Below, piece by piece: positions 1 to 58,081 of a stretch of DNA of 64,000 nucleotides; positions within the stretch are counted from its first letter, which is position 1; each line of letters opens with the position of its first letter. Under the pieces are notes generated by a model, which was given only the letters and a program-made list of their open reading frames with translations, did no database searches and was not told the DNA's origin. Where the stretch lies: positions 1 to 64,000 of the IMG/VR virus record IMGVR_UViG_3300020165_000007, one strand, 5' to 3'. Made by a program: the position numbers and the translations under genes.

Positions 1-688
1 CTGAACTACCTGACGTTCCACTACTTCCTGAAGAACCTGACGTTCCACTACTTCCTGAAGAACCTGATTCTCCACTTGAACCTGAAGAACCTGATGTTCC
101 ACTACTTCCTGAAGAACCTGATGTTCCACTACTTCCTGAAGAACCTGATTCTCCACTTGAACCTGAAGAACCTGATGTTCCACTACTTCCTGAAGAACCT
201 GATGTTCCTGACGAACCTGAACTACCTGATTCTCCACTTGAACCTGATGAACCTGATGTCCCACTACTTCCTGAAGAGCCTGACGTTCCTGAAGAACCGC
301 TACTTCCGCTAGTTCCTGATGAACCTGATGTTCCACTAGAACCTGACGTTCCTGATTGTCCCGTTCTTATCCATTGAGTACCATCGGTTTGAAGTTGGAT
401 GGATTGTAAAGGTGTTAGTACTATATCATCTTGTGATAAGTCAATTAGTGTATCATCATCTGTACCAATAATTAGATTACTAGTTTCTGATAAATTTTTA
501 AATATATATAACTTACCTGTTAAAGTAGTCGCAGATGCCGGAATAGTTACCACAATGTTGGTACTACCGCTCGCTACAATACTGTAATCATCATCTAAAA
601 GAATATAATCACCGTCCTCATTTCTAATAGGTAACGTTATATCACCTTTAGAAACTAAACCATTCCTTATTACAAGTTCATTTGCCAT
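1..688 (-). CDS. GSS/GTS collagen-like fibre protein, partial (runs off the left edge; absent from the ORF track)
   Basis: ATG at 688 gives MANELVIRNGLVSKGDITLPI...LQSIQLQTDGTQWIRTGQSGTSGSSG..., a paralogue of the 755..4960 N-terminus, followed by Gly-X-X repeats up to the edge. Confidence 0.85.
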   Translation of the reverse strand, partial: MANELVIRNGLVSKGDITLPIRNEDGDYILLDDDYSIVASGSTNIVVTIPASATTLTGKLYIFKNLSETSNLIIGTDDDTLIDLSQDDIVLTPLQSIQLQTDGTQWIRTGQSGTSGSSGTSGSSGTSGSSGSSGTSGSSGSSGTSGSSGSSGESGSSGSSGTSGSSGSSGTSGSSGSSGESGSSGSSGTSGSSGSSGTSGSSGSSGESGSSGSSGTSGSSGSSGTSGSS

Positions 689-707
689 ATATAAATATTG
701 TTATATT

Positions 708-743
708 TTAAACTGAACCTGACGGTTGCCAGGTTCAGTTTAA
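708..743 (-). terminator. Hairpin, probable intrinsic terminator
   Basis: 14-bp inverted repeat TTAAACTGAACCTG/CAGGTTCAGTTTAA just downstream of the 755 stop. Confidence 0.6.
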
Positions 744-754
744 TAATTTTATTA

Positions 755-3700
755 TTACATATACTCACCTAAAGGGCGAACATTTATAGTAATAGTATAT
801 GTACCACTTGTTATTGTGAAGCCTAAACTAGCTACTCCGCCAGTGGAGGTTACCCTAAACGAAAGTCCTGCCGTGGAACCTCCAGCATCTCTAGTTGAGG
901 TGTCCGTAAATTGTACCGATGTACTTGTTCCGTCCCAAGCTGATAAGATTGTTCCTGTTCTTGCTCCTGTTGTAGCGTCTGTCTTTTTAACCACATAATC
1001 AATAACCATACCGTCATAATCTGACTGGTTTACAGAGTAGAATGTAGTGTTACTACTCACGACTCCCGCTTGACTAAAGGTTTTAACACCTCTAAACAAG
1101 TCAAATTGTATACAAACGTTATCTACAGGTGTATTTGAAGTGTCAACAAGTGGTGACGCGTATACTGCAGTTGGTGTTATAGTTAGTATGTTACTTGAGA
1201 ATGAAGTTCCTTCCGCATCGAATTCATAGATGATATAACTATCAGTATCATTAAGTTCTGTAATAGTTAACGTTCCACTTAACCGTCTGCCGTTAATCAT
1301 TGTGTAATACTGAGTCCAATCAACACCATCAAAGTTTGTATCAAATATTCTAATAGTACTTGCTGTTGTAATACCTCCAACAAATTGAATGTCACCGTTC
1401 GCATCGGGTACGTTAGAATCTACCTTATAAGTATTACATATTCCTTCACCTGATGTTCCTGAAGAACCACTACTTCCTGAAGTACCTGAAGAACCTGACG
1501 TTCCGCTACTTCCTGAAGAACCTGACGTTCCTGAAGAACCGCTACTACCACTAGTTCCGCTTGAACCTGAACTACCTGACGTTCCACTACTTCCTGAAGA
1601 ACCTGATGTTCCTGATGAACCGCTTGAACCTGAAGTTCCTGAAGAACCTGAACTACCTGATGTTCCGCTACTTCCTGAAGAACCTGATGTTCCTGAAGAA
1701 CCGCTACTTCCACTAGTTCCGCTTGAACCTGAACTACCTGACGTTCCACTACTTCCTGAAGAACCTGATGTTCCTGAAGAACCGCTACTTCCACTAGTTC
1801 CGCTTGAACCTGAACTACCTGACGTTCCACTACTTCCTGAAGAACCTGAAGTTCCTGAAGAACCTGAACTACCTGATGTTCCGCTACTTCCTGAAGAACC
1901 TGACGTTCCTGATGAACCGCTTGAACCTGAAGTTCCTGAAGAACCTGAACTACCTGATGTTCCACTACTTCCTGAAGAACCTGATGTTCCTGAAGAACCG
2001 CTACTTCCACTAGTTCCGCTTGAACCTGAACTACCTGACGTTCCACTACTTCCTGAAGAACCTGAACTACCTGATGTTCCGCTACTTCCTGAAGAACCTG
2101 ATGTTCCTGAAGAACCGCTACTTCCACTAGTTCCGCTTGAACCTGAACTACCTGACGTTCCACTACTTCCTGAAGAACCTGATGTTCCTGAAGAACCGCT
2201 ACTTCCACTAGTTCCGCTTGAACCTGAACTACCTGACGTTCCACTACTTCCTGAAGAACCTGAAGTTCCTGAAGAACCTGAACTACCTGATGTTCCGCTA
2301 CTTCCTGAAGAACCTGACGTTCCTGATGAACCTGAAGAACCTGATGTTCCTGAAGAACCGCTACTACCACTAGTTCCGCTTGAGCCTGAACTACCTGACG
2401 TTCCACTGCTTCCTGAAGAACCTGATGTTCCTGATGAACCGCTTGAACCTGAAGTTCCTGAAGAACCTGAACTACCTGATGTTCCGCTACTTCCTGAAGA
2501 ACCTGACGTTCCTGATGAACCTGAAGAACCTGATGTTCCTGATGAACCTGAACTACCTGACGTTCCACTACTTCCTGAAGAACCTGACGTTCCTGAAGAA
2601 CCAGATGAACCTGAAGTTCCGCTACTTCCTGATGAACCTGAAGAACCTGATGTTCCTGAAGAACCTGAACTACCTGAGGTTCCTGATGAACCACTACTTC
2701 CTGAAGAACCTGACGTTCCTGAAGAACCAGATGAACCTGAAGTTCCGCTACTTCCTGATGAACCTGATGTTCCTGAAGAACCTGAACTACCGGATGTTCC
2801 GCTACTTCCTGAAGAACCTGACGTTCCTGATGAACCACTACTTCCACTAGTTCCTGATGAACCTGAACTACCTGATGTTCCACTACTTCCTGATGAACCT
2901 GATGTCCCTGAAGAACCACTACTTCCGCTAGTTCCTGAAGAACCAGATGAACCTGATGTTCCTGAAGAACCACTACTTCCACTAGTTCCTGATGAACCTG
3001 AAGAACCTGATGTTCCTGAAGAACCACTACTTCCACTAGTTCCTGATGAACCTGAAGAACCTGATGTTCCTGATGAACCACTACTTCCACTAGTTCCTGA
3101 TGAACCTGAACTACCTGATGTTCCACTACTTCCTGATGAACCTGATGTTCCTGAAGAACCACTACTTCCACTAGTTCCTGATGAACCTGATGAACCTGAT
3201 GAACCTGATGAACCACTACTTCCACTAGTTCCTGATGAACCTGAAGAACCTGATGTTCCGCTACTTCCTGATGAACCTGATGTTCCGCTACTTCCTGATG
3301 AACCTGATGTTCCTGATGAACCTGAACTACCTGACGTTCCACTACTTCCTGAAGAACCTGACGTTCCACTACTTCCTGAAGAACCTGATGTTCCTGATGA
3401 ACCTGAAGAACCTGATGTTCCACTACTTCCTGAAGAACCTGATGTTCCACTACTTCCTGAAGAACCTGATGTTCCTGATGAACCTGAAGAACCTGATGTT
3501 CCTGATGAACCTGAACTACCTGATGTTCCACTACTTCCTGATGAACCTGAAGAACCTGACGTTCCGCTACTTCCTGATGAACCTGATGTTCCTGATGAAC
3601 CTGAACTACCTGATGTTCCACTACTTCCTGATGAACCTGATGTTCCTGATGAACCTGAACTGCCTGATGTTCCACTACTTCCTGATGAACCTGAAGTTCC

Positions 3701-4960
3701 GCTACTTCCTGAAGAACCTGATGTTCCTGATGAACCACTACTTCCGCTAGTTCCTGATGAACCTGAAGAACCTGATGTTCCTGATGAACCTGAAGAACCT
3801 GATGTTCCGCTACTTCCTGATGAACCTGATGTTCCTGATGAACCTGAAGAACCTGATGTTCCTGAAGAACCACTACTTCCACTAGTTCCTGATGAACCTG
3901 AACTACCTGATGTTCCACTACTTCCTGATGAACCTGATGTTCCTGATGAACCTGAACTACCTGATGTTCCACTACTTCCTGATGAACCTGAAGTTCCGCT
4001 ACTTCCTGAAGAACCTGATGTTCCTGATGAACCACTACTTCCGCTAGTTCCTGATGAACCTGAAGAACCTGATGTTCCTGATGAACCTGAAGAACCTGAT
4101 GTTCCTGAAGAACCACTACTTCCACTAGTTCCTGATGAACCTGAAGAACCTGATGTTCCGCTACTTCCTGATGAACCTGATGTTCCTGATGAACCTGAAG
4201 AACCTGATGTTCCTGATGAACCTGAAGAACCTGACGTTCCACTACTTCCTGAAGAACCTGATGTTCCATTGGTAAATGGTGTAAAGCAAATTACCGCTGA
4301 CCCTAAATCAAGCGACATAGGATTAGTACCTACAAAATTATTAGTTTGAATAGTAAATCTATAGTATGTTGTAGCTGACTGAACCGCCTGAGGTGTGATT
4401 GAAGTGAAATTATCACTACTATCAGTTATTGTTATTAAACCAGACTCATTTTCAAACTGAGATAATAGACTTGTAATATCAATTCCGTTTTGAGTCGTAT
4501 CAACAACGATAGCTGTGTTAGTAGGGATACTATTATCTATAGTAATATTGTTATCTGCAGGTGTGACTTGTGACCCACTAATATTGGAAATATTTGTGTC
4601 GTAACATCCAGCACCTAATGAACCTCCTGTTTCACTTATAGTTAACCAGTTAGTACCATTAGTAATGATTTGTAAACTTTCATTAACAGATAAAGTAATT
4701 GTACTTTCACCATCAATAGTATTACCATTACCATCTACAATGACTTTTTGGCTTGAATTAAAATTATTTTTTATGATTAGATTTAACCCCTCTACAGGTG
4801 TAGGTAGGGTCATCGTTCTATTCGACGAAGATGCTGTTACATCTATATAGTAATCTGTGTCCGCATCTATTGAGTAATTAGCGTCATTTATCTCAATCAA
4901 CGGTAGTCTAACACCCCCAAGGGATATTAGACCTTTTCTTAATACAAATCCATTTGCCAT
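755..4960 (-). CDS. Long collagen-like (GSS/GTS) fibre protein, 1401 aa
   Basis: Globular N-terminal region, ~940 aa of unbroken Gly-X-X, globular C-terminal region; lies in the tail-appendage cluster. Confidence 0.85.
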   Translation of the reverse strand: MANGFVLRKGLISLGGVRLPLIEINDANYSIDADTDYYIDVTASSSNRTMTLPTPVEGLNLIIKNNFNSSQKVIVDGNGNTIDGESTITLSVNESLQIITNGTNWLTISETGGSLGAGCYDTNISNISGSQVTPADNNITIDNSIPTNTAIVVDTTQNGIDITSLLSQFENESGLITITDSSDNFTSITPQAVQSATTYYRFTIQTNNFVGTNPMSLDLGSAVICFTPFTNGTSGSSGSSGTSGSSGSSGTSGSSGSSGTSGSSGSSGTSGSSGSSGTSGSSGSSGTSGSSGSSGTSGSSGSSGTSGSSGSSGTSGSSGSSGTSGSSGSSGTSGSSGSSGTSGSSGSSGTSGSSGSSGTSGSSGSSGTSGSSGSSGTSGSSGSSGTSGSSGSSGTSGSSGSSGTSGSSGSSGTSGSSGSSGTSGSSGSSGTSGSSGSSGTSGSSGSSGTSGSSGSSGTSGSSGSSGTSGSSGSSGSSGTSGSSGSSGTSGSSGSSGTSGSSGSSGTSGSSGSSGTSGSSGSSGTSGSSGSSGTSGSSGSSGTSGSSGSSGTSGSSGSSGTSGSSGSSGTSGSSGSSGTSGSSGSSGSSGSSGSSGTSGSSGSSGTSGSSGSSGTSGSSGSSGTSGSSGSSGTSGSSGSSGTSGSSGSSGTSGSSGSSGTSGSSGSSGTSGSSGSSGTSGSSGSSGTSGSSGSSGTSGSSGSSGTSGSSGSSGTSGSSGSSGTSGSSGSSGTSGSSGSSGTSGSSGSSGTSGSSGSSGSSGTSGSSGSSGTSGSSGSSGSSGTSGSSGSSGTSGSSGSSGTSGSSGSSGTSGSSGSSGTSGSSGSSGTSGSSGSSGTSGSSGSSGTSGSSGSSGTSGSSGSSGTSGSSGSSGTSGSSGSSGTSGSSGSSGTSGSSGSSGTSGSSGSSGTSGSSGSSGTSGSSGSSGTSGSSGSSGTSGSSGSSGTSGSSGSSGTSGSSGSSGTSGSSGSSGSSGTSGSSGSSGTSGSSGSSGTSGSSGSSGTSGSSGSSGTSGSSGSSGTSGSSGSSGTSGSSGSSGTSGSSGSSGTSGSSGSSGTSGSSGSSGTSGSSGSSGTSGSSGSSGTSGSSGSSGTSGSSGSSGTSGSSGSSGTSGSSGSSGTSGSSGSSGTSGSSGSSGTSGSSGSSGTSGSSGSSGTSGSSGTSGSSGSSGTSGEGICNTYKVDSNVPDANGDIQFVGGITTASTIRIFDTNFDGVDWTQYYTMINGRRLSGTLTITELNDTDSYIIYEFDAEGTSFSSNILTITPTAVYASPLVDTSNTPVDNVCIQFDLFRGVKTFSQAGVVSSNTTFYSVNQSDYDGMVIDYVVKKTDATTGARTGTILSAWDGTSTSVQFTDTSTRDAGGSTAGLSFRVTSTGGVASLGFTITSGTYTITINVRPLGEYM
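1448..4268 (-). repeat. Coding tandem repeat, 27-nt unit encoding (GSSGSSGTS)n
   Basis: Degenerate 9/27-nt periodicity with synonymous variation; Gly at every third codon. Confidence 0.95.
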
Positions 4961-5042
4961 ATTTTATTTTTTTTAGGTTCTTTTTATTTTTTATATAAAT
5001 ACTTTTATATTGTATATTGTTATCTATTTCTACCTTATATTA

Positions 5043-6590
5043 TTAGAATAATATTTCAGTTCTTATTTTAACGTCCCATATCGTACTATTGGTCGTTGTG
5101 GCCCTTAAAATTATATTACTACCACTAATTAAAGTACTAAATACTATATCATCAGTATTAAATGTACCGTCTAAAGTTGAGTAATCCGTAAATACGTTAC
5201 TACTTCCATTTTTACTTACCGCCGATAATATTTTTCCAGTTCTAAATCCGCTTGTTGATTGTTCATTTACATAATATGTGAATTCGTATGAACTTCCTCC
5301 TGTAGTTGGTAGTGAGACTAAATTATGATTACCATTTGTGGTGATAGTCGTATTAACTGATTGTTGATATGAACTACCATATTGTACACTGTTTCCAGAT
5401 ATTAATAGGTTATTAGTTATTCCGTCAAATGTTAAATTACTTTCTACACTTCCAGTACCATCACCATCATAAGTAATAACCCCATTTACTGTATCTCCAT
5501 CTAACTCTAAAAACCCTGATGTTCCACTACTTCCTGAGGAACCTGATGTTCCACTAGAACCTGAACTACCTGATTCTCCTGAAGAACCTGAAGAACCTGA
5601 CGTTCCACTACTTCCTGAGGAACCTGATGTTCCACTAGAACCTGAACTACCTGATTCTCCTGAAGAACCTGAAGAACCTGACGTTCCACTACTTCCTGAT
5701 GAACCTGATGTTCCACTACTACCTGAACTACCTGATTCTCCTGAAGAACCTGAAGAACCTGACGTTCCACTACTTCCTGAGGAACCTGATGTTCCACTAG
5801 AACCTGAACTACCTGATTCTCCTGAAGAACCTGAAGAACCTGACGTTCCACTACTTCCTGATGAACCTGATGTTCCACTACTACCTGAACTACCTGATTC
5901 TCCTGAAGAACCTGAAGAACCTGACGTTCCACTACTTCCTGAGGAACCTGATGTTCCACTAGAACCTGAACTACCTGATTCTCCTGAAGAACCTGAAGAA
6001 CCTGACGTTCCACTAGAACCTGAACTACCTGATTCTCCTGAAGAACCTGAAGAACCTGATGTTCCACTAGAACCTGAACTACCTGATGTTCCTGATGAAC
6101 CTGAAGAACCTGACGTTCCACTACTTCCTGAGGAACCTGATGTTCCACTAGAACCTGAACTACCTGATTCTCCTGAAGAACCTGAAGAACCTGATGTTCC
6201 ACTAGAACCTGAACTACCTGATGTTCCTGAGGAACCTGATGTTCCACTAGAACCTGAACTACCTGATTCTCCTGAAGAACCTGAACTTCCTGACGTTCCA
6301 CTAGAACCTGATGAACCTGATTCTCCACCCGCACCTCCTTCTTTTAATACTAAATCCGAATCTGTAATACCTGAAAAATACCAATAATTTTGTATTCCAT
6401 CTTCAGCCTCTGTTAATTGTAGTCCGTTATATGTTGTTGTACCAGTAACTATACCTACAGTTAACCCTACAAACCTATTCGCACTTACAATACTACTATT
6501 AGCGACTGTAGTGCTACTATACGGACCATATCTTGAATCGAGTGGTAAACCACCTTGTAAATCTATATTACTACTTAAAACTATTCCCAT
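5043..6590 (-). CDS. Collagen-like (GSS/GTS/GES) fibre protein, 515 aa
   Basis: N-domain LPLDSRYGPY...RFVGLTV, ~270 aa Gly-X-X, C-domain homologous to that of 755..4960 (RTG.ILSA...FTD.ST.D). Confidence 0.85.
   Translation of the reverse strand: MGIVLSSNIDLQGGLPLDSRYGPYSSTTVANSSIVSANRFVGLTVGIVTGTTTYNGLQLTEAEDGIQNYWYFSGITDSDLVLKEGGAGGESGSSGSSGTSGSSGSSGESGSSGSSGTSGSSGTSGSSGSSGTSGSSGSSGESGSSGSSGTSGSSGSSGTSGSSGSSGTSGSSGSSGTSGSSGSSGESGSSGSSGTSGSSGSSGESGSSGSSGTSGSSGSSGTSGSSGSSGESGSSGSSGTSGSSGSSGTSGSSGSSGESGSSGSSGTSGSSGSSGTSGSSGSSGESGSSGSSGTSGSSGSSGTSGSSGSSGESGSSGSSGTSGSSGSSGTSGSSGSSGESGSSGSSGTSGSSGSSGTSGFLELDGDTVNGVITYDGDGTGSVESNLTFDGITNNLLISGNSVQYGSSYQQSVNTTITTNGNHNLVSLPTTGGSSYEFTYYVNEQSTSGFRTGKILSAVSKNGSSNVFTDYSTLDGTFNTDDIVFSTLISGSNIILRATTTNSTIWDVKIRTEILF
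5513..6330 (-). repeat. Coding Gly-X-X repeat with GES roughly every 27 aa
   Basis: Near-exact ~81-nt higher-order repeats visible in the DNA. Confidence 0.9.
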
Positions 6591-6594
6591 GATA

Positions 6595-9516
6595 TTATAC
6601 TGTAGATGTTCTTAATTGCATCGACCCAAAACTTTGGGTTTCTGTTTGATAGTTACCTATGTAAATTTTATACCCTACTCCATTCCAATAACCGTCAGGA
6701 CTATCAATATTTGCAGTATCAAAGGTTTGGAATAATCCAGTTGAACCAAAGTTCCCTTTGTTTAAATCAGACACGAAATAACTCTGCTTTGTGTTATATT
6801 CTTCGAAATGTGCAAACCATAAGAACTCAGAAGAAGCATTAAATGTTATTGTTAATGTACTATCTTGGTTATTCGTAATTGATGACTTATTAGCCGTTCC
6901 TCCCGATATTGCGTCTTGAATAGAACTAATTGTTGGTTGGGTGGATGATGTACCATACCAATATGGATATACACCTGTAATCGTTCTGTTGGACGCATCT
7001 AAGTTTGTCCTGGCAGCCTGTGGGGTATTACTATTCGTTCCAAAACTTCTAGTATCGTCATTACCTTTATTGTCTTTTTTAACAACACCTGCGTCGCAAT
7101 CACCTTCCGCGTCATACGTAGTTGAACTACTTGTATTACTTCCTGTTGGTGTGGGTACTGTTAATGTTTCACTAAGTGCCGTACTAGTATATGTGTGGTT
7201 AGGGTTATTATTATTTGTAAATCCAAATTGGTCTGGTATATCAGTAGCGGACCCTTCTGTTGGTGAATTATCTGTTATAACATCGGATGAATTTTTTCTT
7301 AGTCTGATGGACGTGAACTCACCCGCATCATTCTTAGTAGCGACACCTGTAAAGTTTATACTTTCTGTAGTTCCTACCTCAAGAGTTTGACTATTTATAC
7401 CACTAGTAGTAATTGAAGGTGTTGTATATGTTGGTAATACAGTTGGGAATAGTAAGTCGTTAAATAAATCAACCATAGTTTTTCCTGTTAAATCGGCAAC
7501 TGTCGTTCCAGCCTCTATACCTCCTACATCTGCATCCATTTCTAAAGAACTCGTTAAATTAGTATTATATATTGTGTCCGCAGTATAAGGTGTTGATGTG
7601 GTTCCTGAACCTGTTATTCTCACTCCTTCACCACCTACAGTTTCACCACCTATACCTGATGTTCCTGATGAACCTGAACTACCTGATTCTCCTGAAGAAC
7701 CTGAACTTCCTGATGTTCCACTAGAACCTGAACTACCTGATTCTCCACTACTTCCTGATGAACCTGATGTTCCACTACTACCTGAACTACCTGATTCTCC
7801 ACTACTTCCTGATGAACCTGATGTTCCACTACTTCCTGATGAACCTGATTCTCCACTACTTCCTGATGAACCTGACGTTCCACTAGAACCTGAACTACCT
7901 GATTCTCCACTAGAACCTGATGAACCTGACGTTCCACTAGAACCTGAACTACCTGATTCTCCACTACTTCCTGATGAACCTGATGTTCCACTACTTCCTG
8001 ATGAACCTGATTCTCCTGAAGAACCTGAACTTCCTGATGTTCCACTACTACCTGAACTACCTGATTCTCCACTACTTCCTGATGAACCTGATGTTCCACT
8101 ACTACCTGAACTACCTGATTCTCCTGAAGAACCTGAACTTCCTGATGTTCCACTACTACCTGAACTACCTGATTCTCCACTACTTCCTGATGAACCTGAT
8201 GTTCCACTACTACCTGAACTACCTGATTCTCCACTACTTCCTGATGAACCTGATGTTCCACTAGAACCTGAACTACCTGATTCTCCACTAGAACCTGATG
8301 AACCTGACGTTCCACTACTTCCTGATGAACCTGATTCTCCTGAAGAACCTGAACTTCCTGATGTTCCACTAGAACCTGAACTACCTGATTCTCCACTACT
8401 TCCTGATGAACCTGATGTTCCACTACTTCCTGATGAACCTGATTCTCCTGAAGAACCTGAACTTCCTGATGTTCCACTACTTCCTGAACTACCTGATTCT
8501 CCACTACTTCCTGATGAACCTGACGTTCCACTACTTCCTGATGAACCTGATTCTCCTGAAGAACCTGAACTTCCTGATGTTCCACTAGAACCTGAACTAC
8601 CTGATTCTCCACTACTTCCTGATGAACCTGACGTTCCACTACTTCCTGATGAACCTGATTCTCCTGAAGAACCTGAACTTCCTGATGTTCCACTACTACC
8701 TGAACTACCTGATTCTCCACTACTTCCTGATGAACCTGATGTTCCACTACTTCCTGATGTTCCACTACTTCCTGATGAACCTGAACCTCCACCAGTAAAA
8801 CCCGTGACACTTACCGTATCACCTAAATTATTATAAAGTTCTAATGTTGAAGTTCCGCTTAAGTATGTTCCACCTGTTATTGTCGTTAATCCACTTATGG
8901 TAACCGTGTTACCACTATTTGAACTTAAGCTTAAATCTCCGGTACTATTATAATCTACAGTACCTCCCGTAACTTGCCAGTCAGTACCCCAAAATATCCT
9001 CCATCTTGCATTAGTGGCACTAACTCCATTATATCCTTCAACTGTTGAACCTGTCCAAGCGTTTAGTAAGTTTGTACCATCGGTTGTTGCGTTGGTGACA
9101 CTATATAGCCCATCTCCCGAATTATATGAAATCGACCCCGCACTGTCAGCAGCATTAAATAAACTTTCATAATTTGGTATGACATACTGATATGTTTTAT
9201 CAACTTCTCTGACGTAAACCAACATACCAATTTTTCTTCTTCCTGAAGATATCCCATCAGCCCAAAGTTTAACAGTGTCGGGTAAAAAAGATAATCCTCT
9301 TTCGACATACCTTATCGGTATGGTGTTAGCAGATAATTGTATATCTGAACCAGGACTACCGGTTAATATTAAATCTAAATCGCTTATAGTATTAACTTCC
9401 CTATAACCTCCAATATTATTAATACTAAAGTTACTACCTACATATGTTTCAGGTTGTAATGATATCGCGTCTGTATTAACTATTGACGATTTTGGAGTTC
9501 TATATTCGTATGCCAT
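6595..9516 (-). CDS. Collagen-like fibre protein, 973 aa
   Basis: N-domain with RRKIGMLVYV, ~380 aa (GESGSSGSSGTSGSSGSS)n, beta-rich C-terminal region. Confidence 0.85.
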   Translation of the reverse strand: MAYEYRTPKSSIVNTDAISLQPETYVGSNFSINNIGGYREVNTISDLDLILTGSPGSDIQLSANTIPIRYVERGLSFLPDTVKLWADGISSGRRKIGMLVYVREVDKTYQYVIPNYESLFNAADSAGSISYNSGDGLYSVTNATTDGTNLLNAWTGSTVEGYNGVSATNARWRIFWGTDWQVTGGTVDYNSTGDLSLSSNSGNTVTISGLTTITGGTYLSGTSTLELYNNLGDTVSVTGFTGGGSGSSGSSGTSGSSGTSGSSGSSGESGSSGSSGTSGSSGSSGESGSSGSSGTSGSSGSSGESGSSGSSGTSGSSGSSGESGSSGSSGTSGSSGSSGESGSSGSSGTSGSSGSSGESGSSGSSGTSGSSGSSGESGSSGSSGTSGSSGSSGESGSSGSSGTSGSSGSSGESGSSGSSGTSGSSGSSGESGSSGSSGTSGSSGSSGESGSSGSSGTSGSSGSSGESGSSGSSGTSGSSGSSGESGSSGSSGTSGSSGSSGESGSSGSSGTSGSSGSSGESGSSGSSGTSGSSGSSGESGSSGSSGTSGSSGSSGESGSSGSSGTSGSSGSSGESGSSGSSGTSGSSGSSGESGSSGSSGTSGSSGSSGESGSSGSSGTSGIGGETVGGEGVRITGSGTTSTPYTADTIYNTNLTSSLEMDADVGGIEAGTTVADLTGKTMVDLFNDLLFPTVLPTYTTPSITTSGINSQTLEVGTTESINFTGVATKNDAGEFTSIRLRKNSSDVITDNSPTEGSATDIPDQFGFTNNNNPNHTYTSTALSETLTVPTPTGSNTSSSTTYDAEGDCDAGVVKKDNKGNDDTRSFGTNSNTPQAARTNLDASNRTITGVYPYWYGTSSTQPTISSIQDAISGGTANKSSITNNQDSTLTITFNASSEFLWFAHFEEYNTKQSYFVSDLNKGNFGSTGLFQTFDTANIDSPDGYWNGVGYKIYIGNYQTETQSFGSMQLRTSTV
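7655..8790 (-). repeat. Coding 54-nt repeat (GESGSSGSSGTSGSSGSS)n
   Basis: Strict alternation of GES and GTS every 9 aa. Confidence 0.9.
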
Positions 9517-9527: not shown

Positions 9528-11711
9528 TTACGAGACGGTTCCACCTCTTAGGAATACATCATTTGAAGTGTTGTTTATCTGCATCCCAGAGGCCGCCCAT
9601 GTTGAATACAGTCTATACTCTGTGTTCGTATATACTGTACCTGTGTAGTCAAGTAATCTATCATATAAAGTATTACTAGTATTAAAAGTGGTTCCGTATG
9701 AACTAGAAGTGCCATACTCTATTTGTGTAACTCTATTACTTGAACCACCTAAGGTGTTCTGTGGTACCGCAACTATATACCATGCACTTTCACTTACAGT
9801 TCCATCAGGTACTTCAAATTCATCAAATAAGTTTTGTCTAGGTCCTGATTGAGGAACCGTTGATGTGTATACCTGTGGTAATCCGGTAACTCCCGAAGTA
9901 GCATACATTTCCATCCATGTGAGTAATGAATCGTTTGTTGTTGCTGCGAATCCAGCGTTAAATCCGAAGAAATCAGGGAAAGAAATTCCTTGACCATTTA
10001 AATAACCTGATATGTCGCTACTCTTGGATGCAGGCTCGATAAATAGAAGTGCGGGTCCTAAGGCAGCCGCACTAGGTGTTATACTTGGTGTCACTGTTGC
10101 TGATGGTGTTATAGTCGGCGTTGCCGTGATTGATGGCGTTGCCGTGATTGATGGCGTTGCCGTGATTGATGGCGTTGCCGTGATTGATGGCGTTGCCGTG
10201 ATTGATGGCGTTGCGGTAATTGATGGAGTTGCGGTAATTGATGGAGTTGCGGTGATTGATGGAGTTATCGATGGTGTTGCAGTTATCGATGGTGTGGCTG
10301 TTATTGACGGTGTAGCTGTTATTGACGGAGTTGCGGTGATTGATGGAGTTGCAGTTATTGATGGTGTTACTGAAGGAGTCGCGGTTATTGACGGAGTGGC
10401 TGTTATTGATGGTGTTGCGGTGACTGATGGTGTTGCAGTTATCGATGGTGTTGCAGTTATCGATGGAGTTACTGATGGTGTTGCAGTTATCGATGGTGTT
10501 GCAGTTATCGATGGTGTGGCTGTTATTGACGGTGTAGCTGTTATTGACGGAGTTGCGGTGATTGATGGAGTTGCAGTTATTGATGGAGTTGCGGTGATTG
10601 ATGGTGTTACTGAAGGAGTCGCGGTTATCGATGGTGTTGCAGTTATCGATGGTGTTGCAGTTATCGATGGTGTTGCAGTTATCGATGGAGTTACTGATGG
10701 TGTTGCAGTTATCGATGGTGTTGCAGTTATCGATGGTGTTGCAGTTATCGATGGTGTTGCAGTTATCGATGGTGTGGCTGTTATTGACGGTGTAGCAGTT
10801 ATTGACGGAGTTGCGGTGATTGATGGAGTTGCAGTTATTGACGGAGTTGCGGTGATTGATGGAGTTGCAGTTATTGATGGAGTTGCGGTGATTGATGGTG
10901 TTGCAGTTATCGATGGTGTTGCAGTTATCGATGGAGTGGCCGTTATCGATGGTGTTGCTGTTATCGATGGTGTTGCGGTTATCGATGGAGTTGCGGTGAT
11001 TGATGGAGTTGCAGTTATTGATGGTGTTGCGGTTATCGATGGCGTTGCAGTTATAGACGGTGTTGCCGTTATCGATGGTGTTGCGGTTATCGATGGAGTT
11101 ACCGATGAAGTAGGTGTAGGAGACTCTCCTGGTGTTACTGAAGGAGTCGCGGTTATCGATGGAGTTGCAGTTATCGATGGTGTTGCAGTTATCGATGGTG
11201 TTGCTGTTATCGATGGTGTTGCGGTTATCGATGGAGTTGCAGTTATCGATGGTGTGGCTGTTATTGACGGTGTAGCAGTTATTGACGGAGTTGCGGTGAT
11301 TGATGGAGTTGCCGTTATCGATGGTGTTGCAGTTATCGATGGTGTTGCGGTTATCGATGGAGTTACCGATGAAGTAGGTGTAGGAGACTCTCCTGGTGTT
11401 GCTGTTATCGATGGAGTGGCCGTTATCGATGGAGTGGCCGTTATCGATGGAGTTGCTGTTATTGATGGAGTTGGTGTTGGTGATACACCAATATTAACGG
11501 TAGTGGTAGTACCACTGCACGGTCCCGCATCACTAACAACTATATACACACTATTAGTGTCGTCATCTAAAAAAGTAATTCCGTTTACTAACTGGTTTCT
11601 AGTCACTCCAGTTATAAAGTTTGCGGGAATCTGTGAAGTGTGGTATATATCCAAGGTCGATATGTCCACACCCACACTTGTACCGCTTAATGTTACTTCT
11701 CTTTGCGCCAT
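9528..11711 (-). CDS. Mucin-like (TPSITA)n stalk protein, 727 aa
   Basis: Short N-domain, ~470 aa Thr/Pro/Ser repeat, ~180-aa globular C-domain; ATG preceded by the TATTTAT element. Confidence 0.85.
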   Translation of the reverse strand: MAQREVTLSGTSVGVDISTLDIYHTSQIPANFITGVTRNQLVNGITFLDDDTNSVYIVVSDAGPCSGTTTTVNIGVSPTPTPSITATPSITATPSITATPSITATPGESPTPTSSVTPSITATPSITATPSITATPSITATPSITATPSITATPSITATPSITATPSITATPSITATPSITATPSITATPSVTPGESPTPTSSVTPSITATPSITATPSITATPSITATPSITATPSITATPSITATPSITATPSITATPSITATPSITATPSITATPSITATPSITATPSITATPSITATPSITATPSITATPSITATPSITATPSITATPSITATPSVTPSITATPSITATPSITATPSITATPSVTPSITATPSITATPSITATPSITATPSITATPSITATPSITATPSVTPSITATPSITATPSVTATPSITATPSITATPSVTPSITATPSITATPSITATPSITATPSITATPSITPSITATPSITATPSITATPSITATPSITATPSITATPSITATPSITATPTITPSATVTPSITPSAAALGPALLFIEPASKSSDISGYLNGQGISFPDFFGFNAGFAATTNDSLLTWMEMYATSGVTGLPQVYTSTVPQSGPRQNLFDEFEVPDGTVSESAWYIVAVPQNTLGGSSNRVTQIEYGTSSSYGTTFNTSNTLYDRLLDYTGTVYTNTEYRLYSTWAASGMQINNTSNDVFLRGGTVS
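10070..11480 (-). repeat. Coding 18-nt repeat (TPSITA)n
   Basis: 18-nt periodicity with synonymous variation. Confidence 0.95.
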
Positions 11712-11791
11712 CCTTAAACCTTTTTATTTTTTATATAAATAGTGGTTAGTTTTAATTTGTACCACATTATTTTACCTATAAAAATATTTTT

Positions 11792-14692
11792 TTATTTAAT
11801 TTCACCTACAGATAATAAATCATAAGCCACAACATTTACCGAACCTTCGACATTTAATTCGCAACTTATTTGTCTAGAGGTACCAACGACCGTAAGAGTA
11901 CAACTATATACGGGTTGAGTACTCGATGGAGTCGGTGTTAAAGTAACTGTTGGGGTTGATGTTGGGGTCGCACCTGGAGTAGCGGTTAAACTAGGTGTAA
12001 CCGTTATAGTTGGAGTTACTGTAGGAGTTACTGTAGAGGTGGGTGTTGGTGACACGGGACCTATTCTTCCCGCACAATTAACATTTATTTCTATTTCAAC
12101 CTTTAGTTCAATAAATGCACCATTTAATGGGTCTATATCACCCTCACAATCACCTTTTACCGTAAATATATTATTTAGTAAATCCGTGGTATATGTAATT
12201 CCACTAAATTGTGATAACATTCCTTGAACTATAGTTTCCCATTCATTATCTGAAGGAACATCATTTAAGGTATATCCAGTATAAAATGCGTTTTCTATAG
12301 TTTGACCTACACCATAACTACCCCCTGATATCGTGAGAACTCCAGTAAACACCGCGCTTTCTAAGTAACATCCATTTCCTGGTTGATTTAAATCTAAGAA
12401 AGCCTCGTTTAACATTTCATAAAACCCTCTCTTACCTTCTGAACTGGTTACAAACTCTTGCTCACATAAAGTATTAATTACGTAGTCATCAACGTTTTCA
12501 TCATTACAGGTTATTGAAACACTCTTAATTATTGAACAACCTTCACTATCTACAATTGTTGCCGTATATGTACCTCCTGAAAGACCTGTTAAATATAAAC
12601 CTGTCTGCGAAGTAGGTACATTAGCTGACCACGTAATTGTGAATGGTGCGATACCATCTGTTATAGTTAAACTTGCAGTTCCATCATTACCTGAAACACA
12701 TGGTGTACTATATAGTACTGCCTGTACTCCTCCTGTCCCTTCTAATATAGTAAAGTACTGTGTTACTGCACATCCTTCATTATCCGTAACAACAACTTGA
12801 TACGAACCCTGAGGTAAGTTATTTACTAATTCAACATTACTTAAAGACCCAATATTGTTAGAAACTACAGTTCCATCACTAATTTGTGATACCACATAAC
12901 TAAGTGGATATTTAATCTCAGTAGTACCCGATGAAACCTCTATATTTACCTCTCCATTTGACTGTCCGCAAGTTGTTGCGGTTAATGATGTCGCAACAGT
13001 AAACTTATTCTCATTTAATATTGTGGCAGTGTCAGTATATTTACACCCATTAATTAATTCTATTCCGATTTGATATGTCCCAGAAGCAAGATTCTCAAAG
13101 GTATATGATTGATTTGTTGTTGTTACCGTTTGGATATTACCTCCACTACCCGTTAAAGTATACGTTAATGGACCTTGATTGGCATTTACATTTATTTGAA
13201 TTGACCCATCTTCACCACAATCAGAATTTTCAGTTATAATACTAACCAAACTAAATCCCGCGGTTGAGGTTAATTGAACGGGTTGGTTAATTGAACATTG
13301 TCCAGCATCTTCAATTAAGATATTATAAGCCCCTCCACATAAACTATTTAACGTAAATGTTGTTGAACCGTTCTGTATTTGTCCCGTACTACCTGAGAAA
13401 TAATAAGGTAAGGTACCTCCAGTAACTGTAACAGTGATTGTACCATCACAATCAAAACAAGTTGGTTGTGTTCCTACTATATTTGAAACCCCCAATAATG
13501 GTAACTGCGGTACTGTAAACCGTTTCGTTATTACACACCCATTCGCATCTGTCACAGTAACCGATGCATCCCCCGCGGGTAAATTAGATACAGATGGGGT
13601 AGTATCTAATGTTGACCAAAAATATGTAAAGGGAGGAGTACCACCTGTAAAGTTAGTAACCTCACCATACCCAGTATTTGCAACTAAACAAGGACTCGCA
13701 CCTGTTATTAAAACTTCATAATCAAAACTAGCAACTGAGTTAATTGTAACGGTATCCGTTTGTCCTGTTTGTCCGTTACCGTCTACTACAATTGCGTAGT
13801 ATTCACCAGGTAAAATATCACTATCTATAGTAATTATATTTTCATTATAGAATTCGTCACTAAACTCATTTCCATTATAATAAAGATATACATGATACGG
13901 ATACGACAATGAATTACCTGAAATATTAATAATACCTGTAGTTAAGTTACATGTGATATCAACACCAGATATATCAACCTCAAAACAAGGGTTAACTACC
14001 ACCTGTGTTGTTAATTCTCTAGCGGTAGGTAAAGTACTATCACTAATATTAAAAACGTAAGTAGTTGCAGATAAACCACTAAAATTAAATGGACCGTTAC
14101 CTTGCGTTGTAGGTATAGTCCCTGGTGAGGAGTTAACTATTAAGTAAGGGTTAGTTCCCCCCTCTACATCAAGATATATTGACCCGTCATCACCACAGTC
14201 AGGGGTTCCTGAAAAAGTCACACTTAACGGTCCTTCATCACAATTGGGTGTACATTCAAAACTTGTAACGTCAATACCTGAATAAGGTAATGTAGTGTTT
14301 ACGCAAAATACAACTCCTAAACTTGAACCTCTTTGTGTGACTCCACAACAATCCATAAATTCATAGTTACCATTTGTTGTACCTGAAACACAATCAGGAA
14401 CAACAGGTGGAGTCGGGGTAGGTGTCGGCGTTATAGTAGGTGTCGGTGTTGGGCTTGTGGGGATGTTAGCCGATGCATAACATATAGCACCTGAATCCAT
14501 ATCAATAACTTGATATTCAAAACAAGTCCCAGTAATAAACGACTCAACGTCAAATTGAAATGGGAAATCACTATATGTTAGTGAAGACGCAACGTCTGTA
14601 TATGTTGTTACATCACAATCTTTTACACTAACTGTATAATTACCCGGATTTGGGTCTGAAACTCCTAATGATATGTTTACTATTTGACTCAT
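11792..14692 (-). CDS. SprB-repeat-like adhesin / virion appendage protein
   Basis: Repeated GGTPPFTYFWS...LPAG...VTVTDANGC-type units typical of Bacteroidota SprB repeats; start trimmed to ATG 14692 (MSQIVN). Confidence 0.75.
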   Translation of the reverse strand: MSQIVNISLGVSDPNPGNYTVSVKDCDVTTYTDVASSLTYSDFPFQFDVESFITGTCFEYQVIDMDSGAICYASANIPTSPTPTPTITPTPTPTPPVVPDCVSGTTNGNYEFMDCCGVTQRGSSLGVVFCVNTTLPYSGIDVTSFECTPNCDEGPLSVTFSGTPDCGDDGSIYLDVEGGTNPYLIVNSSPGTIPTTQGNGPFNFSGLSATTYVFNISDSTLPTARELTTQVVVNPCFEVDISGVDITCNLTTGIINISGNSLSYPYHVYLYYNGNEFSDEFYNENIITIDSDILPGEYYAIVVDGNGQTGQTDTVTINSVASFDYEVLITGASPCLVANTGYGEVTNFTGGTPPFTYFWSTLDTTPSVSNLPAGDASVTVTDANGCVITKRFTVPQLPLLGVSNIVGTQPTCFDCDGTITVTVTGGTLPYYFSGSTGQIQNGSTTFTLNSLCGGAYNILIEDAGQCSINQPVQLTSTAGFSLVSIITENSDCGEDGSIQINVNANQGPLTYTLTGSGGNIQTVTTTNQSYTFENLASGTYQIGIELINGCKYTDTATILNENKFTVATSLTATTCGQSNGEVNIEVSSGTTEIKYPLSYVVSQISDGTVVSNNIGSLSNVELVNNLPQGSYQVVVTDNEGCAVTQYFTILEGTGGVQAVLYSTPCVSGNDGTASLTITDGIAPFTITWSANVPTSQTGLYLTGLSGGTYTATIVDSEGCSIIKSVSITCNDENVDDYVINTLCEQEFVTSSEGKRGFYEMLNEAFLDLNQPGNGCYLESAVFTGVLTISGGSYGVGQTIENAFYTGYTLNDVPSDNEWETIVQGMLSQFSGITYTTDLLNNIFTVKGDCEGDIDPLNGAFIELKVEIEINVNCAGRIGPVSPTPTSTVTPTVTPTITVTPSLTATPGATPTSTPTVTLTPTPSSTQPVYSCTLTVVGTSRQISCELNVEGSVNVVAYDLLSVGEIK

Positions 14693-14696
14693 GATA

Positions 14697-32334: not shown

Positions 32335-32339
32335 ATAAT

Positions 32340-56537: not shown

Positions 56538-56554
56538 ATTTTTGTGTAAAAAAA

Positions 56555-58076: not shown

Positions 58077-58081
58077 GTATT

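What the first reader, a model, noticed from the sequence alone, without database searches (positions are those of the whole stretch)
1..9516. Four tandem proline-free Gly-Ser-Ser collagen-like fibre genes
Seen: four adjacent genes each carry an unbroken Gly-X-X tract made only of G/S/T(/E): ~940 aa in 755..4960, ~270 aa in 5043..6590, ~380 aa in 6595..9516, plus a truncated one. Known: collagen needs Gly at every third position and normally gains stability from Pro or charged pairs, which are nearly absent here. Inference: these are either Ser-based triple helices (~270 nm for the longest at ~0.29 nm/residue), polyglycine-II bundles, or flexible tethers carrying a binding domain far from the virion, possibly stabilised by O-glycosylation.
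Basis: partly seen in the sequence, partly recalled or inferred. Interest (0 to 1): 0.8.

Follow-up and report, generated by a model that had tools for sequence, protein, structure and literature searches.

The report
Serine-only collagen-like phage fibre genes
A large uncultured marine phage carries a row of fibre genes whose middle parts are hundreds of proline-free Gly-Ser-Ser/Gly-Thr-Ser triplets; this is an unstudied extreme form of the known collagen-like phage fibre, and it most likely acts as a length-adjustable shaft between a virion anchor and a host-binding tip.

Summary
Four adjacent minus-strand genes hold unbroken Gly-X-Y tracts of at least 40, 313, 91 and 125 triplets. X is Ser, Thr or Glu and Y is Ser; there is no Pro and no basic residue.

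The window is the first 64 kb of a 270-kb IMG/VR contig from a marine/estuarine T4-like jumbo myovirus. The genes lie after the baseplate wedge genes. The "truncated" gene is cut by the contig end. A ~95-98% relative shows it complete (1041 aa, 221+15 triplets) and followed by a fifth such gene.

What relatives show:
- **The tract is optional.** It sits at a fixed hinge, and orthologues carry 0 to 125 triplets.
- **Its length varies** in steps of whole triplets.
- **It is a recombination joint.** N- and C-terminal modules are found in new combinations across it.
- **Gly is constrained.** Across 14,068 similar triplets from other viral contigs, Gly is lost about 20-30 times less often than X or Y changes.
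- **The flanking domains look like phage fibre parts** by predicted fold.

Best reading: trimeric fibres with a Ser/Thr-only collagen-like shaft. The triple helix is inferred, not shown; a flexible tether is the main rival. Tracts of about 220 triplets are reproduced in three assemblies, but the exact lengths of genes B and C are uncertain. I rate this a new variant of a known kind.

The parts
1..688 (-). Gene A, 5' part only (229 codons). N-terminal anchor-type module (aa 1-109, window 362..688), then at least 40 Gly-X-Y triplets (2..361) that run off the contig end.
   Evidence: The N module is 37% identical to that of gene B. The full-length homologue in L128 is 1041 aa with 221+15 triplets and two globular modules.
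755..4960 (-). Gene B, 1401 aa. N-terminal region aa 1-231 (4268..4960) holds the anchor-type module plus a Cys-bracketed module. The tract is aa 232-1170 (1451..4267; 313 triplets, GSS/GTS only). The C-terminal region is aa 1171-1401 (755..1450).
   Evidence: AF2 model of the N region: pLDDT 84. Fold match to a phage tailspike and a capsid spike. The L128 homologue has 242 triplets.
5043..6590 (-). Gene C, 515 aa. N module aa 1-88 (6327..6590), tract of 91 triplets (5508..6326), C domain aa 362-515 (5043..5507), which is weakly similar to the end of B.
   Evidence: The same N and C domains occur with 15 to 65 triplets in other assemblies.
6595..9516 (-). Gene D, 973 aa. N region aa 1-245 (8782..9516), tract of 125 triplets (7657..8781), C-terminal beta-sandwich region aa 621-973 (6595..7656).
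   Evidence: There are 65 homologues, with 0 to 125 triplets at the same hinge. AF2 pLDDT 90.8. Fold matches to phage tail and tail-fibre proteins.
9528..14710 (-). Context: two further repeat-rich structural genes just upstream in transcription order. One is a PSITAT-hexapeptide-repeat protein (9528..11711). The other is a SprB-repeat protein (11792..14710). Both are syntenic in relative L003.
30496..32819 (-). Context: gp6-like (30496..32334) and gp25-like (32340..32819) baseplate wedge genes. These place the array at the distal end of a baseplate/fibre module.
   Evidence: Sheath, tube and hub lie at 55782..61479.

Best explanation
The array encodes paralogous, modular virion fibres (adhesins) of an uncultured marine/estuarine T4-like jumbo myovirus. 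Its host is probably a member of the Bacteroidota.

Each protein has three parts:
- an N-terminal module that fixes it to the virion;
- a Gly-X-Y tract of almost pure Gly-Ser-Ser/Gly-Thr-Ser;
- one or more C-terminal beta-sandwich modules that bind the host surface.

Three chains most likely wind the tract into a thin collagen-type triple helix. The globular modules at both ends hold it in register. It serves as a shaft whose length sets how far the binding tip stands from the particle.

Because the DNA is a 9/27-nt repeat, slippage and unequal crossing-over add or remove whole triplets, so fibre length changes quickly. Any repeat can also act as an in-frame crossover point for swapping anchors and tips between fibre genes.

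Shown:
- gene structure, composition and position in the genome;
- the tract is optional and variable in length;
- module shuffling across the tract;
- the constraint on Gly;
- fold resemblance of the flanking domains to phage fibre and spike parts;
- reproducible assembly of a tract of about 220 triplets.

Inferred:
- trimer state and triple-helical conformation;
- presence in the virion;
- tail rather than head attachment;
- the host.
For: Position:
- All genes are co-directional and follow the gp25/gp6-like wedge genes and large structural ORFs. Sheath, tube and hub lie upstream.

Flanking domains:
- The ~110-aa N module of A/B is found in 472 protein clusters.
- Its AF2 model (pLDDT 84) matches a solved Acinetobacter phage tailspike (100 columns, rmsd 1.9, probability 1.00) and the Pseudomonas phage Pa223 capsid spike.
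- The D C-terminal model (pLDDT 90.8) matches predicted tail and tail-fibre proteins of crAss-like and Tenacibaculum phages (E down to 2.5e-14, TM about 0.5).

Spacer role:
- D orthologues have 0, 6, 27, 33, 91 or 125 triplets at one hinge, and the rest of each protein aligns.
- C occurs with 15 to 91 triplets between identical end domains.
- B and its 98%-identical relative differ only by in-frame indels (19 gaps, 16 of them multiples of 9 nt).

Shuffling:
- P0075 combines a D-type N domain (59% identity) with a C-type C domain.
- P0003 combines an E-type N domain (49%) with a D-type C domain (91%).

Collagen-type constraint:
- In 411 Pro-free Ser/Thr-rich runs (14,068 triplets) from 121 other viral loci plus this window's own tracts, X is not Ser/Thr in 8.7% of triplets and Y is not Ser in 16%.
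- In-phase loss of Gly occurs only about 70 times, roughly 0.5%.
- Homologues with the same N module carry ordinary GPT/GPQ/GAT/GIQ/GEQ collagen tracts that start at the same residue, about 110.
- Both Ser codon families (TCN and AGY) are used at every Ser position of the 9-residue unit, so Ser is kept at the protein level.

The long tracts are real:
- The gene A homologue is 99.9% identical in three metagenome assemblies, with 215, 220 and 221 triplets. It has no exact repeat of 141 nt or more.
- The flanks of B and C are found without a difference in runs from 2014, 2022 and 2025.

Precedent:
- Collagen-like prophage side-tail fibres of E. coli O157 are trimers with two globular ends on a stalk (PMC3368898).
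- Gly-X-Y tail-fibre candidates are known in marine cyanophage P-SSM2 (PMC1079782).
Against: - Neither of the stabilising features named in PMC3368898 (Pro in X, charged residues) nor imino acids in general are present: no Pro, no Lys or Arg, and therefore no ion pairs.
- From my own knowledge of host-guest peptide work, Ser has a modest triple-helix propensity in both X and Y.
- (GSS)n is used by protein engineers as a flexible linker (for example PMC12752949).
- No coiled coil or known trimerisation domain was found next to the tracts. Pfam and PHROGs gave nothing for the flanks.
- The D C-terminal model shows tandem Ig-like sandwiches. Its best solved-structure match is weak (E 7.5e-4, TM 0.17) and is to the binding region of a streptococcal adhesin, so that model says nothing about a trimer.
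- Only monomer structure prediction was available.
- No Logan contig crosses a tract, so tract lengths in this genome are unverified.
- Short forms of C come from k141 assemblies that could have collapsed the repeat.
- Presence in the virion is not shown. RNA-run contigs cover the flanks but could be DNA carry-over.
Confidence: 0.6

Rival explanations
1. Flexible tether. The tract does not fold. Each chain (or three unassociated chains) is a highly soluble, non-sticky, protease-poor random coil that lets the binding tip search a volume around the virion (fly-casting). In this reading the Gly periodicity is mostly a legacy of amplifying a 9-nt unit.
For: - (GSS)n is a standard synthetic flexible linker.
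- There is no Pro and there are no charge pairs.
- The tract is dispensable in orthologues, and its length is very free.
- The neighbouring gene uses a different low-complexity spacer (PSITAT repeats), which cannot be a triple helix.
- The D C-terminal model gives no indication of a trimer: its solved-structure matches are weak hits to Ig-like folds, the best to the binding region of a streptococcal adhesin.
Against: - In a random coil, Gly to Ser or Ala would be neutral. Yet Gly is lost about 20-30 times less often than X or Y change over 14,068 triplets.
- No out-of-register break occurs in up to 313 triplets.
- Homologues place canonical Pro-containing collagen tracts in the same slot.
- The solved phage collagen-like fibre protein (EPclA, PMC3368898) is a trimer, and the N module matches parts of a tailspike and a capsid spike.
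Confidence: 0.25
2. Head (capsid) fibres rather than tail fibres. The proteins have the same architecture but are anchored on the capsid, giving a 'hairy' head like that described for the flavobacterial jumbo phage PTm1.
For: - The second-best solved match of the A/B N module is a capsid spike (Pa223).
- Tenacibaculum jumbo phages PTm1 and PTm5 have hair-like capsid protrusions (PMC13282480).
- A PTm5 protein matches the D C-terminal fold.
- Five long fibres is a large number for one baseplate.
Against: - The array directly continues the baseplate wedge module.
- The best solved match is a tailspike.
- The best predicted-structure matches with a name are called tail protein or tail fibre.
- No capsid gene is nearby in the window.
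Confidence: 0.2
3. Polyglycine-II bundle. Each chain folds back on itself into a lattice of antiparallel polyproline-II helices, as in snow-flea antifreeze protein or the gp38-type adhesin tip, giving a compact block rather than a long rod.
For: Gly at every third residue with small side chains elsewhere suits tight packing of PPII helices.
Against: - From my own knowledge, known PGII domains use short helices of about 8-12 residues joined by turns and are richer in Gly.
- Here Gly is exactly 33.3%, and there is no periodic turn signal in 273 to 939 residues.
- Relatives tolerate bulky Ile, Val, Leu, Glu and Asn at X and Y.
- Free variation by single triplets would upset a lattice.
Confidence: 0.05
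4. Assembly artefact. Short-read assemblers inflated or invented the tracts, and the real genes have few or no triplets.
For: - The source contig ends inside a tract.
- All five related metagenome contigs begin and end inside tracts.
- There are exact repeats of up to 295 nt in C and more than 251 nt in B.
- C is assembled with 15 to 91 triplets in different projects.
- No contig crosses the C tract in four runs.
Against: - The gene A homologue is assembled three times independently with 215-221 triplets at 99.9% identity, and its longest exact repeats are under 141 nt.
- D has no exact repeat of 127 nt or more.
- The repeat units differ at synonymous sites (59-90% matches), and every version stays in frame with both end domains.
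- De Bruijn assemblers usually collapse repeats rather than expand them.
Confidence: 0.04

Closest known systems
EPclA-D, collagen-like side-tail fibre proteins of E. coli O157:H7 prophages (PMC3368898)
   Same: Both are phage fibre proteins with a globular N end, a Gly-X-Y stalk and a globular C end. In EPclA the protein was shown to be a trimer and dumbbell-shaped. The stalk acts as a spacer in a host-attachment protein.
   Different: The EPclA collagen domain is short and rich in Pro at X and in charged residues, which the authors use to explain its 42 degree melting point. It also has PfN, coiled-coil and PfC trimerisation modules. Here there is no Pro, no basic residue and no detected coiled coil. 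No Pfam family other than Collagen was found. The tracts are 91 to 313 triplets long.
Gly-X-Y tail-fibre candidates of marine T4-like cyanophages and pelagimyophages (P-SSM2 orf023/orf028, PMC1079782; 'triple collagen repeats' in host-recognition clusters, PMC7029224)
   Same: These are also marine T4-type myoviruses with simple Gly-X-Y triplet repeats in genes next to baseplate and fibre genes. X and Y are described as often Pro, Ser or Thr.
   Different: Those tracts still contain Pro, and they were only noted in passing. The present ones are Ser/Thr-only. They come as an array of four or five paralogues. The data here also show optional presence, length variation and module swapping.
BclA of the Bacillus anthracis exosporium (own knowledge, not checked here)
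   Same: BclA has a collagen-like region of simple triplets (GPT) between an N-terminal anchor and a C-terminal trimeric knob. The number of triplets varies between strains and sets filament length. Its Thr residues are O-glycosylated.
   Different: BclA has Pro in every triplet. It is a bacterial spore protein, not a phage fibre. There is no sequence relation.
Synthetic (GSS)n and (GGS)n flexible linkers (for example PMC12752949)
   Same: The composition is the same as the natural tract.
   Different: The linkers are single chains of tens of residues, chosen because they do not fold. The natural tracts are hundreds of residues long, sit between domains of likely oligomeric fibres, and show a constraint on Gly.
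Hair-like capsid fibres of Tenacibaculum jumbo phages PTm1 and PTm5 (PMC13282480 citing Kawato et al. 2020)
   Same: These are marine flavobacterial jumbo myoviruses with many long thin appendages. A PTm5 protein shares the predicted fold of the D C-terminal region.
   Different: The relation is by fold only (TM 0.47). I could not check whether the PTm fibres contain Gly-X-Y tracts.

Membership tests
Collagen-like (Gly-X-Y) proteins of bacteria and phages, Pfam PF01391 | Gly at every third residue over a long uninterrupted stretch | tested here: met
   313, 125, 91 and at least 40 triplets without a break. These are the only such runs in the window.
Collagen-like (Gly-X-Y) proteins of bacteria and phages, Pfam PF01391 | Score above the Pfam gathering threshold | tested here: met
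   423, 179, 135 and 65 bits against a cut-off of 27.2. The score is largely compositional, so it is weak as evidence of fold.
Collagen-like (Gly-X-Y) proteins of bacteria and phages, Pfam PF01391 | Sequence features known to stabilise a triple helix: imino acids, or Lys/Arg-Glu/Asp pairs | tested here: not met
   No Pro, Lys or Arg in 1138 X/Y positions. Glu is present only in A, C and D, in 8-16% of their triplets.
Collagen-like (Gly-X-Y) proteins of bacteria and phages, Pfam PF01391 | Selective constraint on Gly stronger than on X and Y | tested here: met
   About 0.5% in-phase Gly loss, against 8.7% change at X and 16% at Y, over 14,068 triplets from 121 other viral loci plus this window's own tracts. 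Substitutions in D-family tracts keep Gly.
Collagen-like (Gly-X-Y) proteins of bacteria and phages, Pfam PF01391 | Trimeric, triple-helical conformation (CD, melting, protease resistance) | not testable with these tools
   Only monomer AlphaFold2 was available, and no experiment was possible.
Phage tail fibre or tailspike proteins | Gene lies in the tail/baseplate module | tested here: met
   The genes are downstream of and co-directional with the gp25-like and gp6-like genes. Sheath, tube and hub are in the same strand block.
Phage tail fibre or tailspike proteins | Domains related to known fibre or spike parts | tested here: met
   By fold only. The N module matches a solved tailspike and a capsid spike. 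The D C region matches predicted tail and tail-fibre proteins. Sequence searches of PDB, Pfam and PHROGs found nothing informative.
Phage tail fibre or tailspike proteins | Conserved anchor with a variable, exchangeable distal part | tested here: met
   A and B share the N module. Modules are recombined in P0075 and P0003.
Phage tail fibre or tailspike proteins | Protein present in virions | not testable with these tools
   The phage is uncultured and no proteome is available.
EPclA-type prophage collagen-like side-tail proteins | PfN, coiled-coil and PfC flanking domains | tested here: not met
   Pfam finds only Collagen in all four proteins, so none of the named flanking domain families is detected. 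Coiled coils were not scanned with a dedicated tool.
Polyglycine-II bundle domains (snow-flea antifreeze, gp38-type adhesin tip) | Short PPII segments joined by turns, with Gly well above one third | tested here: not met
   Gly is exactly one third, and there is no break or turn motif in up to 939 residues. The family features are from my own knowledge.
Serine-rich-repeat adhesins of Gram-positive bacteria | Ser-X dipeptide repeats, a signal peptide for the accessory Sec system, and an LPXTG anchor | tested here: not met
   The repeat here is a Gly-led triplet. No signal peptide or anchor motif is seen in the translations. The fold match of the D C region to an SRR binding region is weak (E 7.5e-4, TM 0.17).

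The most novel reading that the evidence does not exclude
Gly-Ser-Ser/Gly-Thr-Ser tracts form a true collagen triple helix with no imino acid and no charge pair. This would be a new stability class, held by end domains, by sheer length and perhaps by Ser/Thr hydroxyl-water networks or glycosylation. Aquatic phages would use it widely as a cheap, trypsin-proof shaft of tunable length, reaching more than 200 nm.
Probability: 0.4. Interest if true: 0.75.

Novelty: new variant of a known kind. Interest (0 to 1): 0.55.

Why it matters
**For collagen biophysics.** Textbook stability rules rest on Pro/Hyp or on charge pairs. Here is a natural tract of 200 to 300 triplets that has neither, that is under selection, and that recurs in over a hundred viral contigs. 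It offers a clean test of the minimal sequence needed for a triple helix. It would also be a simple, repetitive, recombinantly accessible scaffold.

**For phage ecology.** The data show one way a fibre can change its reach and swap its tip. A coding microsatellite serves both as a length dial and as an in-frame recombination joint. The phage is present in many marine and estuarine samples from 2014 to 2025.

**For metagenomics.** These tracts are systematic contig breakpoints, and their unit counts differ between assemblies. Fibre genes of such phages will therefore be truncated or mis-sized in short-read catalogues.

Tried and rejected
- **Other reading frames.** The long ORFs in the other two minus frames and on the + strand across the tracts are rejected. 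Only the Gly-Ser-Ser frame joins conserved end domains.
- **Sequence searches of the flanking domains.** PDB gave nothing significant. Pfam gave only Collagen. PHROGs gave only unnamed families. GenBank phages gave no hit for the C C-domain, three weak hits for the D C-domain and two Arthrobacter phage hits for the B N-module.
- **B C-terminal domain.** A search among proteins of 770-2450 aa found no hit. The ESM Atlas gave only unnamed viral clusters.
- **Laying reads on 1..6000.** The allowed part, 4100..6700, gave perfect flanks but only fragments inside tracts, so tract length could not be verified in this genome.
- **Circular closure.** I looked for the missing end of gene A and for the fifth gene elsewhere in IMG/VR, including the far end of the source contig. 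Nothing was found.
- **Glycosyltransferases.** None was found among the ORFs of 150 aa or more that were scanned.
- **tRNAs as a host clue.** None found.
- **Homology among the Cys-bracketed modules.** BLAST E-values of 0.4-0.9 do not establish it.
- **Literature.** Searches for Gly-Ser-Ser or serine-rich collagen in phages found no study of this composition.

Full report
**1. What is in the sequence**

The window's first 9.5 kb hold four adjacent minus-strand genes (the frame of the cut one is). I call them A (1..688, partial), B (755..4960, 1401 aa), C (5043..6590, 515 aa) and D (6595..9516, 973 aa).

Each has an unbroken Gly-X-Y tract: at least 40, 313, 91 and 125 triplets.
- The triplets are GSS, GTS and, in A, C and D, GES. 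There is also one GQS at the start of A's tract and one GFL at the end of C's.
- Y is Ser in 568 of 569 triplets.
- There is no Pro, Lys or Arg at 1138 X/Y positions. Neighbouring structural proteins have 4.8% Pro and 7.2% Gly.
- No other Gly-X-Y run of 8 or more triplets exists in any frame of the window.
- All four pass Pfam Collagen, though that score is mainly compositional.

At the DNA level the tracts are imperfect tandem arrays with periods of 27, 54, 81, 108 and 162 nt and 59-90% matches. Both Ser codon families (TCN and AGY) are used at every Ser position of the 9-residue unit. Ser is therefore maintained at the protein level, not only by copying of DNA.

**2. Where it comes from**

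The window is bases 1-64000 of IMGVR_UViG_3300020165_000007, a contig of 270,383 bp. Gene A is therefore cut by the contig end, not by mutation.

The window encodes the following, all on one strand:
- a T4-type tail sheath, tube and baseplate hub (55.8-61.5 kb);
- gp25-like and gp6-like wedge proteins (30.5-32.8 kb);
- RNR, DnaB, UvsX, SSB and an exonuclease between them.

The sheath is at most about 30% identical to that of any deposited phage; the best match is Microcystis phage Mel-JY01.

The fibre array closes a run of large unannotated structural ORFs that follow the wedge genes. Directly before it come a SprB-repeat protein and a PSITAT-repeat protein.

The same DNA is held by at least 14 marine or estuary metagenome runs from 2014 to 2025 and by metatranscriptome runs.

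Three hints point to a Bacteroidota host, none decisive:
- the SprB repeats;
- a 31% homologue of the D tip in a tail-like cluster of Chryseolinea sp. T2;
- fold matches to crAss-like and Tenacibaculum phage tail proteins.

**3. Are the tracts real?**

Short reads struggle here.
- Exact repeats reach 295 nt in C and more than 251 nt in B. D has none of 127 nt or more.
- Laying Logan contigs of four runs on 4100..6700 gave flanks with no difference at depth 10-28, and 7-20 in an RNA run. Inside the tract there were only fragments and no spanning contig.
- All five related metagenome contigs begin and end inside tracts.
- Gene C, with 100% identical end domains, is assembled with 15, 23, 26, 41, 45, 47, 56, 65 and (here) 91 triplets. 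The shortest form comes from four k141 assemblies, where collapse is plausible.

Against inflation:
- The homologue of A is assembled in three different metagenomes at 99.9% identity with 215, 220 and 221 triplets.
- Two of those differ by a single 9-nt indel.
- That tract has no exact repeat of 141 nt or more.

Tracts of more than 200 triplets therefore exist. The exact numbers for B (313 here, 242 in the relative) and for C are uncertain.

**4. What relatives teach**

(a) *The array is longer than four genes.* Contig L128 is a relative with ~95% identical proteins (~98% DNA identity over gene B). It carries D', C', B' and a complete A'. A' is 1041 aa: the N module, 221 triplets, a ~105-aa globular module, 15 triplets, and a ~115-aa end module. 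A fifth gene E' follows, with a 267-aa N domain and at least 73 triplets, cut by the contig end.

(b) *The tract is an optional insert at a fixed hinge.* Among 65 homologues of D, proteins of 584-633 aa have no tract at all, and others have 6, 27, 33, 91, 119 or 125 triplets. One N-terminal sequence type occurs with 0, 6, 91 and 37+16 triplets. In the alignment the tract opens exactly after a conserved beta-rich module that ends in VTGFTGG.

(c) *Length changes by whole triplets.* B and B' are 98% identical and differ by 19 indels, all multiples of 3 nt and 16 of them multiples of 9 nt.

(d) *The tract is a recombination joint.* P0075 joins a D-type N domain (59% identity) to a C-type C domain (59%). 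P0003 joins an E-type N domain (49%) to a D-type C domain (91%).

Those loci, together with relative L003 and this window's own tracts, hold 411 Pro-free, Ser/Thr-rich runs, 14,068 triplets in all; the longest single run found in them is 785 triplets.

(f) *Gly is constrained.* In those runs X differs from Ser/Thr in 8.7% of triplets and Y differs from Ser in 16%. An in-phase triplet without Gly, flanked by at least 8 good triplets on each side, occurs only about 70 times, roughly 0.5%. The seed pattern biases this somewhat, but most triplets lie outside the seeds.

(g) *The slot is a collagen slot.* The ~110-aa N module shared by A and B (37% identity) is found in 472 clusters. In several of them (P0108, P0114, P0115) it is followed, from the same residue, by ordinary bacterial-type collagen triplets: GPT, GPQ, GAT, GIQ and GEQ.

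**5. The end domains**

No sequence method named them.

AlphaFold2 with alignments gave confident monomer models.
- **D C region:** pLDDT 90.8, all-beta, tandem sandwiches.
  - Against solved structures it gives only weak Ig-like hits. The best is the binding region of a streptococcal serine-rich-repeat adhesin (E 7.5e-4, TM 0.17).
  - Against predicted viral structures it matches proteins named tail protein, tail fibre or minor tail protein, from crAss-like phages, Tenacibaculum phages PTm5 and pT24, and others (E to 2.5e-14, TM about 0.5).
- **B N region:** pLDDT 84. The first module matches a solved Acinetobacter phage tailspike (100 columns, rmsd 1.9, probability 1.00) and the Pa223 capsid spike.

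In A' and B the globular modules next to the tracts are bracketed by Cys pairs 102-108 residues apart. The pair in the B N region is kept in a 50% homologue. I could not measure whether the pairs touch in the model.

**6. Most likely mechanism**

The parts fit the usual plan of a phage fibre: a conserved anchor, a shaft and an exchangeable tip. The shaft is a collagen-type tract of an extreme composition.

I think the three chains of a fibre form a triple helix. My reasons:
- Gly, and only Gly, is nearly untouchable.
- The register is never broken in the window.
- Homologues use canonical collagen tracts in the same slot.
- The one studied prophage collagen-like fibre is a trimeric dumbbell (PMC3368898).

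If so, B would be about 270 nm long at 313 triplets, or about 210 nm at 242. A' would be about 190 nm.

The steps that are inferred are the trimer, the helix, virion presence and the attachment site.

The composition has plausible side benefits, which are also inference:
- no trypsin or chymotrypsin sites;
- high solubility;
- amino acids that cost little nitrogen and carbon.

The repeat DNA itself gives fast change of length and in-frame module exchange. Both are seen in the data.

**7. Rivals**

*Flexible tether (0.25).* (GSS)n is a standard engineered linker. None of the usual stabilisers is present. The neighbouring gene uses a Pro/Thr-type spacer that cannot be collagen. The Gly constraint and the shared slot argue against it.

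*Head fibres rather than tail fibres (0.2; this concerns location only, not the mechanism).* It is suggested by the capsid-spike match and by the hairy capsids of PTm1 and PTm5 (PMC13282480). Gene position argues for the baseplate.

*Polyglycine-II bundles (0.05).* There are no turns, Gly is only one third of residues, and bulky X/Y residues are tolerated.

*Pure assembly artefact (0.04).* See section 3.

**8. Comparison with what is known, and novelty**

Collagen-like tracts in phage fibres have been known since 'Bacteriophage collagen' (Smith et al. 1998, cited in PMC1079782).
- They were noted in marine cyanophage P-SSM2, with X and Y 'often proline, serine, or threonine' (PMC1079782).
- They were noted in pelagimyophage host-recognition clusters (PMC7029224).
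- EPclA has been characterised biochemically (PMC3368898). There, stability is ascribed to Pro at X and to charged residues.

The present tracts meet the periodicity and Pfam criteria of the family. They fail the stabiliser criterion, and the fold is untested. I therefore file them as a new variant of a known kind, not as a proven triple helix.

I found no paper on this composition.

- the fibre-with-distant-tip idea holds;
- the choice among conformations stays open, with the triple helix favoured and PGII unlikely;
- glycosylation has no support in the 64 kb seen.

**9. Verdict**

It is a widespread but unstudied Ser/Thr-only form of the phage collagen-like fibre. There is clear evidence for its role as an optional, length-variable, recombinogenic spacer, and indirect evidence for a triple helix.

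Interest is 0.55. The question it opens, whether a triple helix can exist without imino acids or charge pairs, can be tested directly with one recombinant construct.

Noticed in passing
window 9528-11711 (-): A 727-aa protein whose middle is about 75 copies of the hexapeptide PSITAT (18-nt period, 10120-11473) between small N and C domains. The syntenic gene in L003 uses TPSVTN/TPSNTN instead. This is a second, Pro/Thr-type low-complexity spacer right next to the Gly-Ser-Ser genes. The + strand ORF 10012-11742 is a repeat by-product.
   Followed up: partly
window 11792-14710 (-): A 972-aa protein with SprB repeats (Pfam PF13573, 43 bits) and Pro/Thr linkers at both ends. It is syntenic in L003. 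SprB repeats are typical of Bacteroidota gliding adhesins, so this is a host hint.
   Followed up: partly
L128 9613-11076 (+), and L127/L129 ends: A fifth collagen-like fibre gene (267-aa N domain, at least 73 triplets) follows gene A in the close relative. It would lie beyond the start of this window's contig. Neither it nor the end of gene A was found elsewhere in IMG/VR.
   Followed up: yes
window 1; loci L124, L125, L127, L128, L129: The source contig starts inside a tract, and all five related metagenome contigs both begin and end inside tracts. These repeats are systematic breakpoints of short-read assemblies.
   Followed up: yes
window 4100-4273 and 5492-6361: Summed word depth of Logan contigs inside tracts is 10 to 1000 times that of the flanks. 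It reaches about 50,000-80,000 in metatranscriptome run X15. The same 31-mers must occur in many other abundant sequences of these samples.
   Followed up: no
window 4268-4618 and 1076-1450 (gene B); L128 8779-9585 (gene A'): The globular modules of about 105 aa next to the tracts are bracketed by Cys pairs 102-108 residues apart. The pair in the B N region is conserved in a 50% homologue. They may be disulfide-closed 'beads' on the fibre. Sequence similarity among the modules is not significant.
   Followed up: partly
window 32886-40784 (-): A block of nucleotide-metabolism and replication genes (RNR large and small subunits, DnaB-like helicase, exonuclease, UvsX-like recombinase, SSB) sits between the sheath/tube/hub genes and the wedge/fibre genes.
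   Followed up: no
window 41774-53452 (-): Two giant ORFs (2204 aa and 1585 aa) with no PHROG hit. The only Pfam hit is a short OmpA-like stretch (29 bits) in the 1585-aa one.
   Followed up: no
L132 (ENA k141 contig), 3107-3961: The 284-aa form of gene C (15 triplets, identical end domains) is followed here by an opposite-strand gene instead of gene B. This is either another phage carrying the same gene or a chimeric join at the repeat.
   Followed up: no
L130 (Chryseolinea sp. T2), 4630-12480: A tail-like cluster in a Bacteroidota genome. It has the D-type tip as a separate 334-aa gene, a 212-aa protein ending in the A/B-type module, and a 1092-aa protein with a C-type N terminus. It holds the same modules without collagen tracts.
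   Followed up: partly
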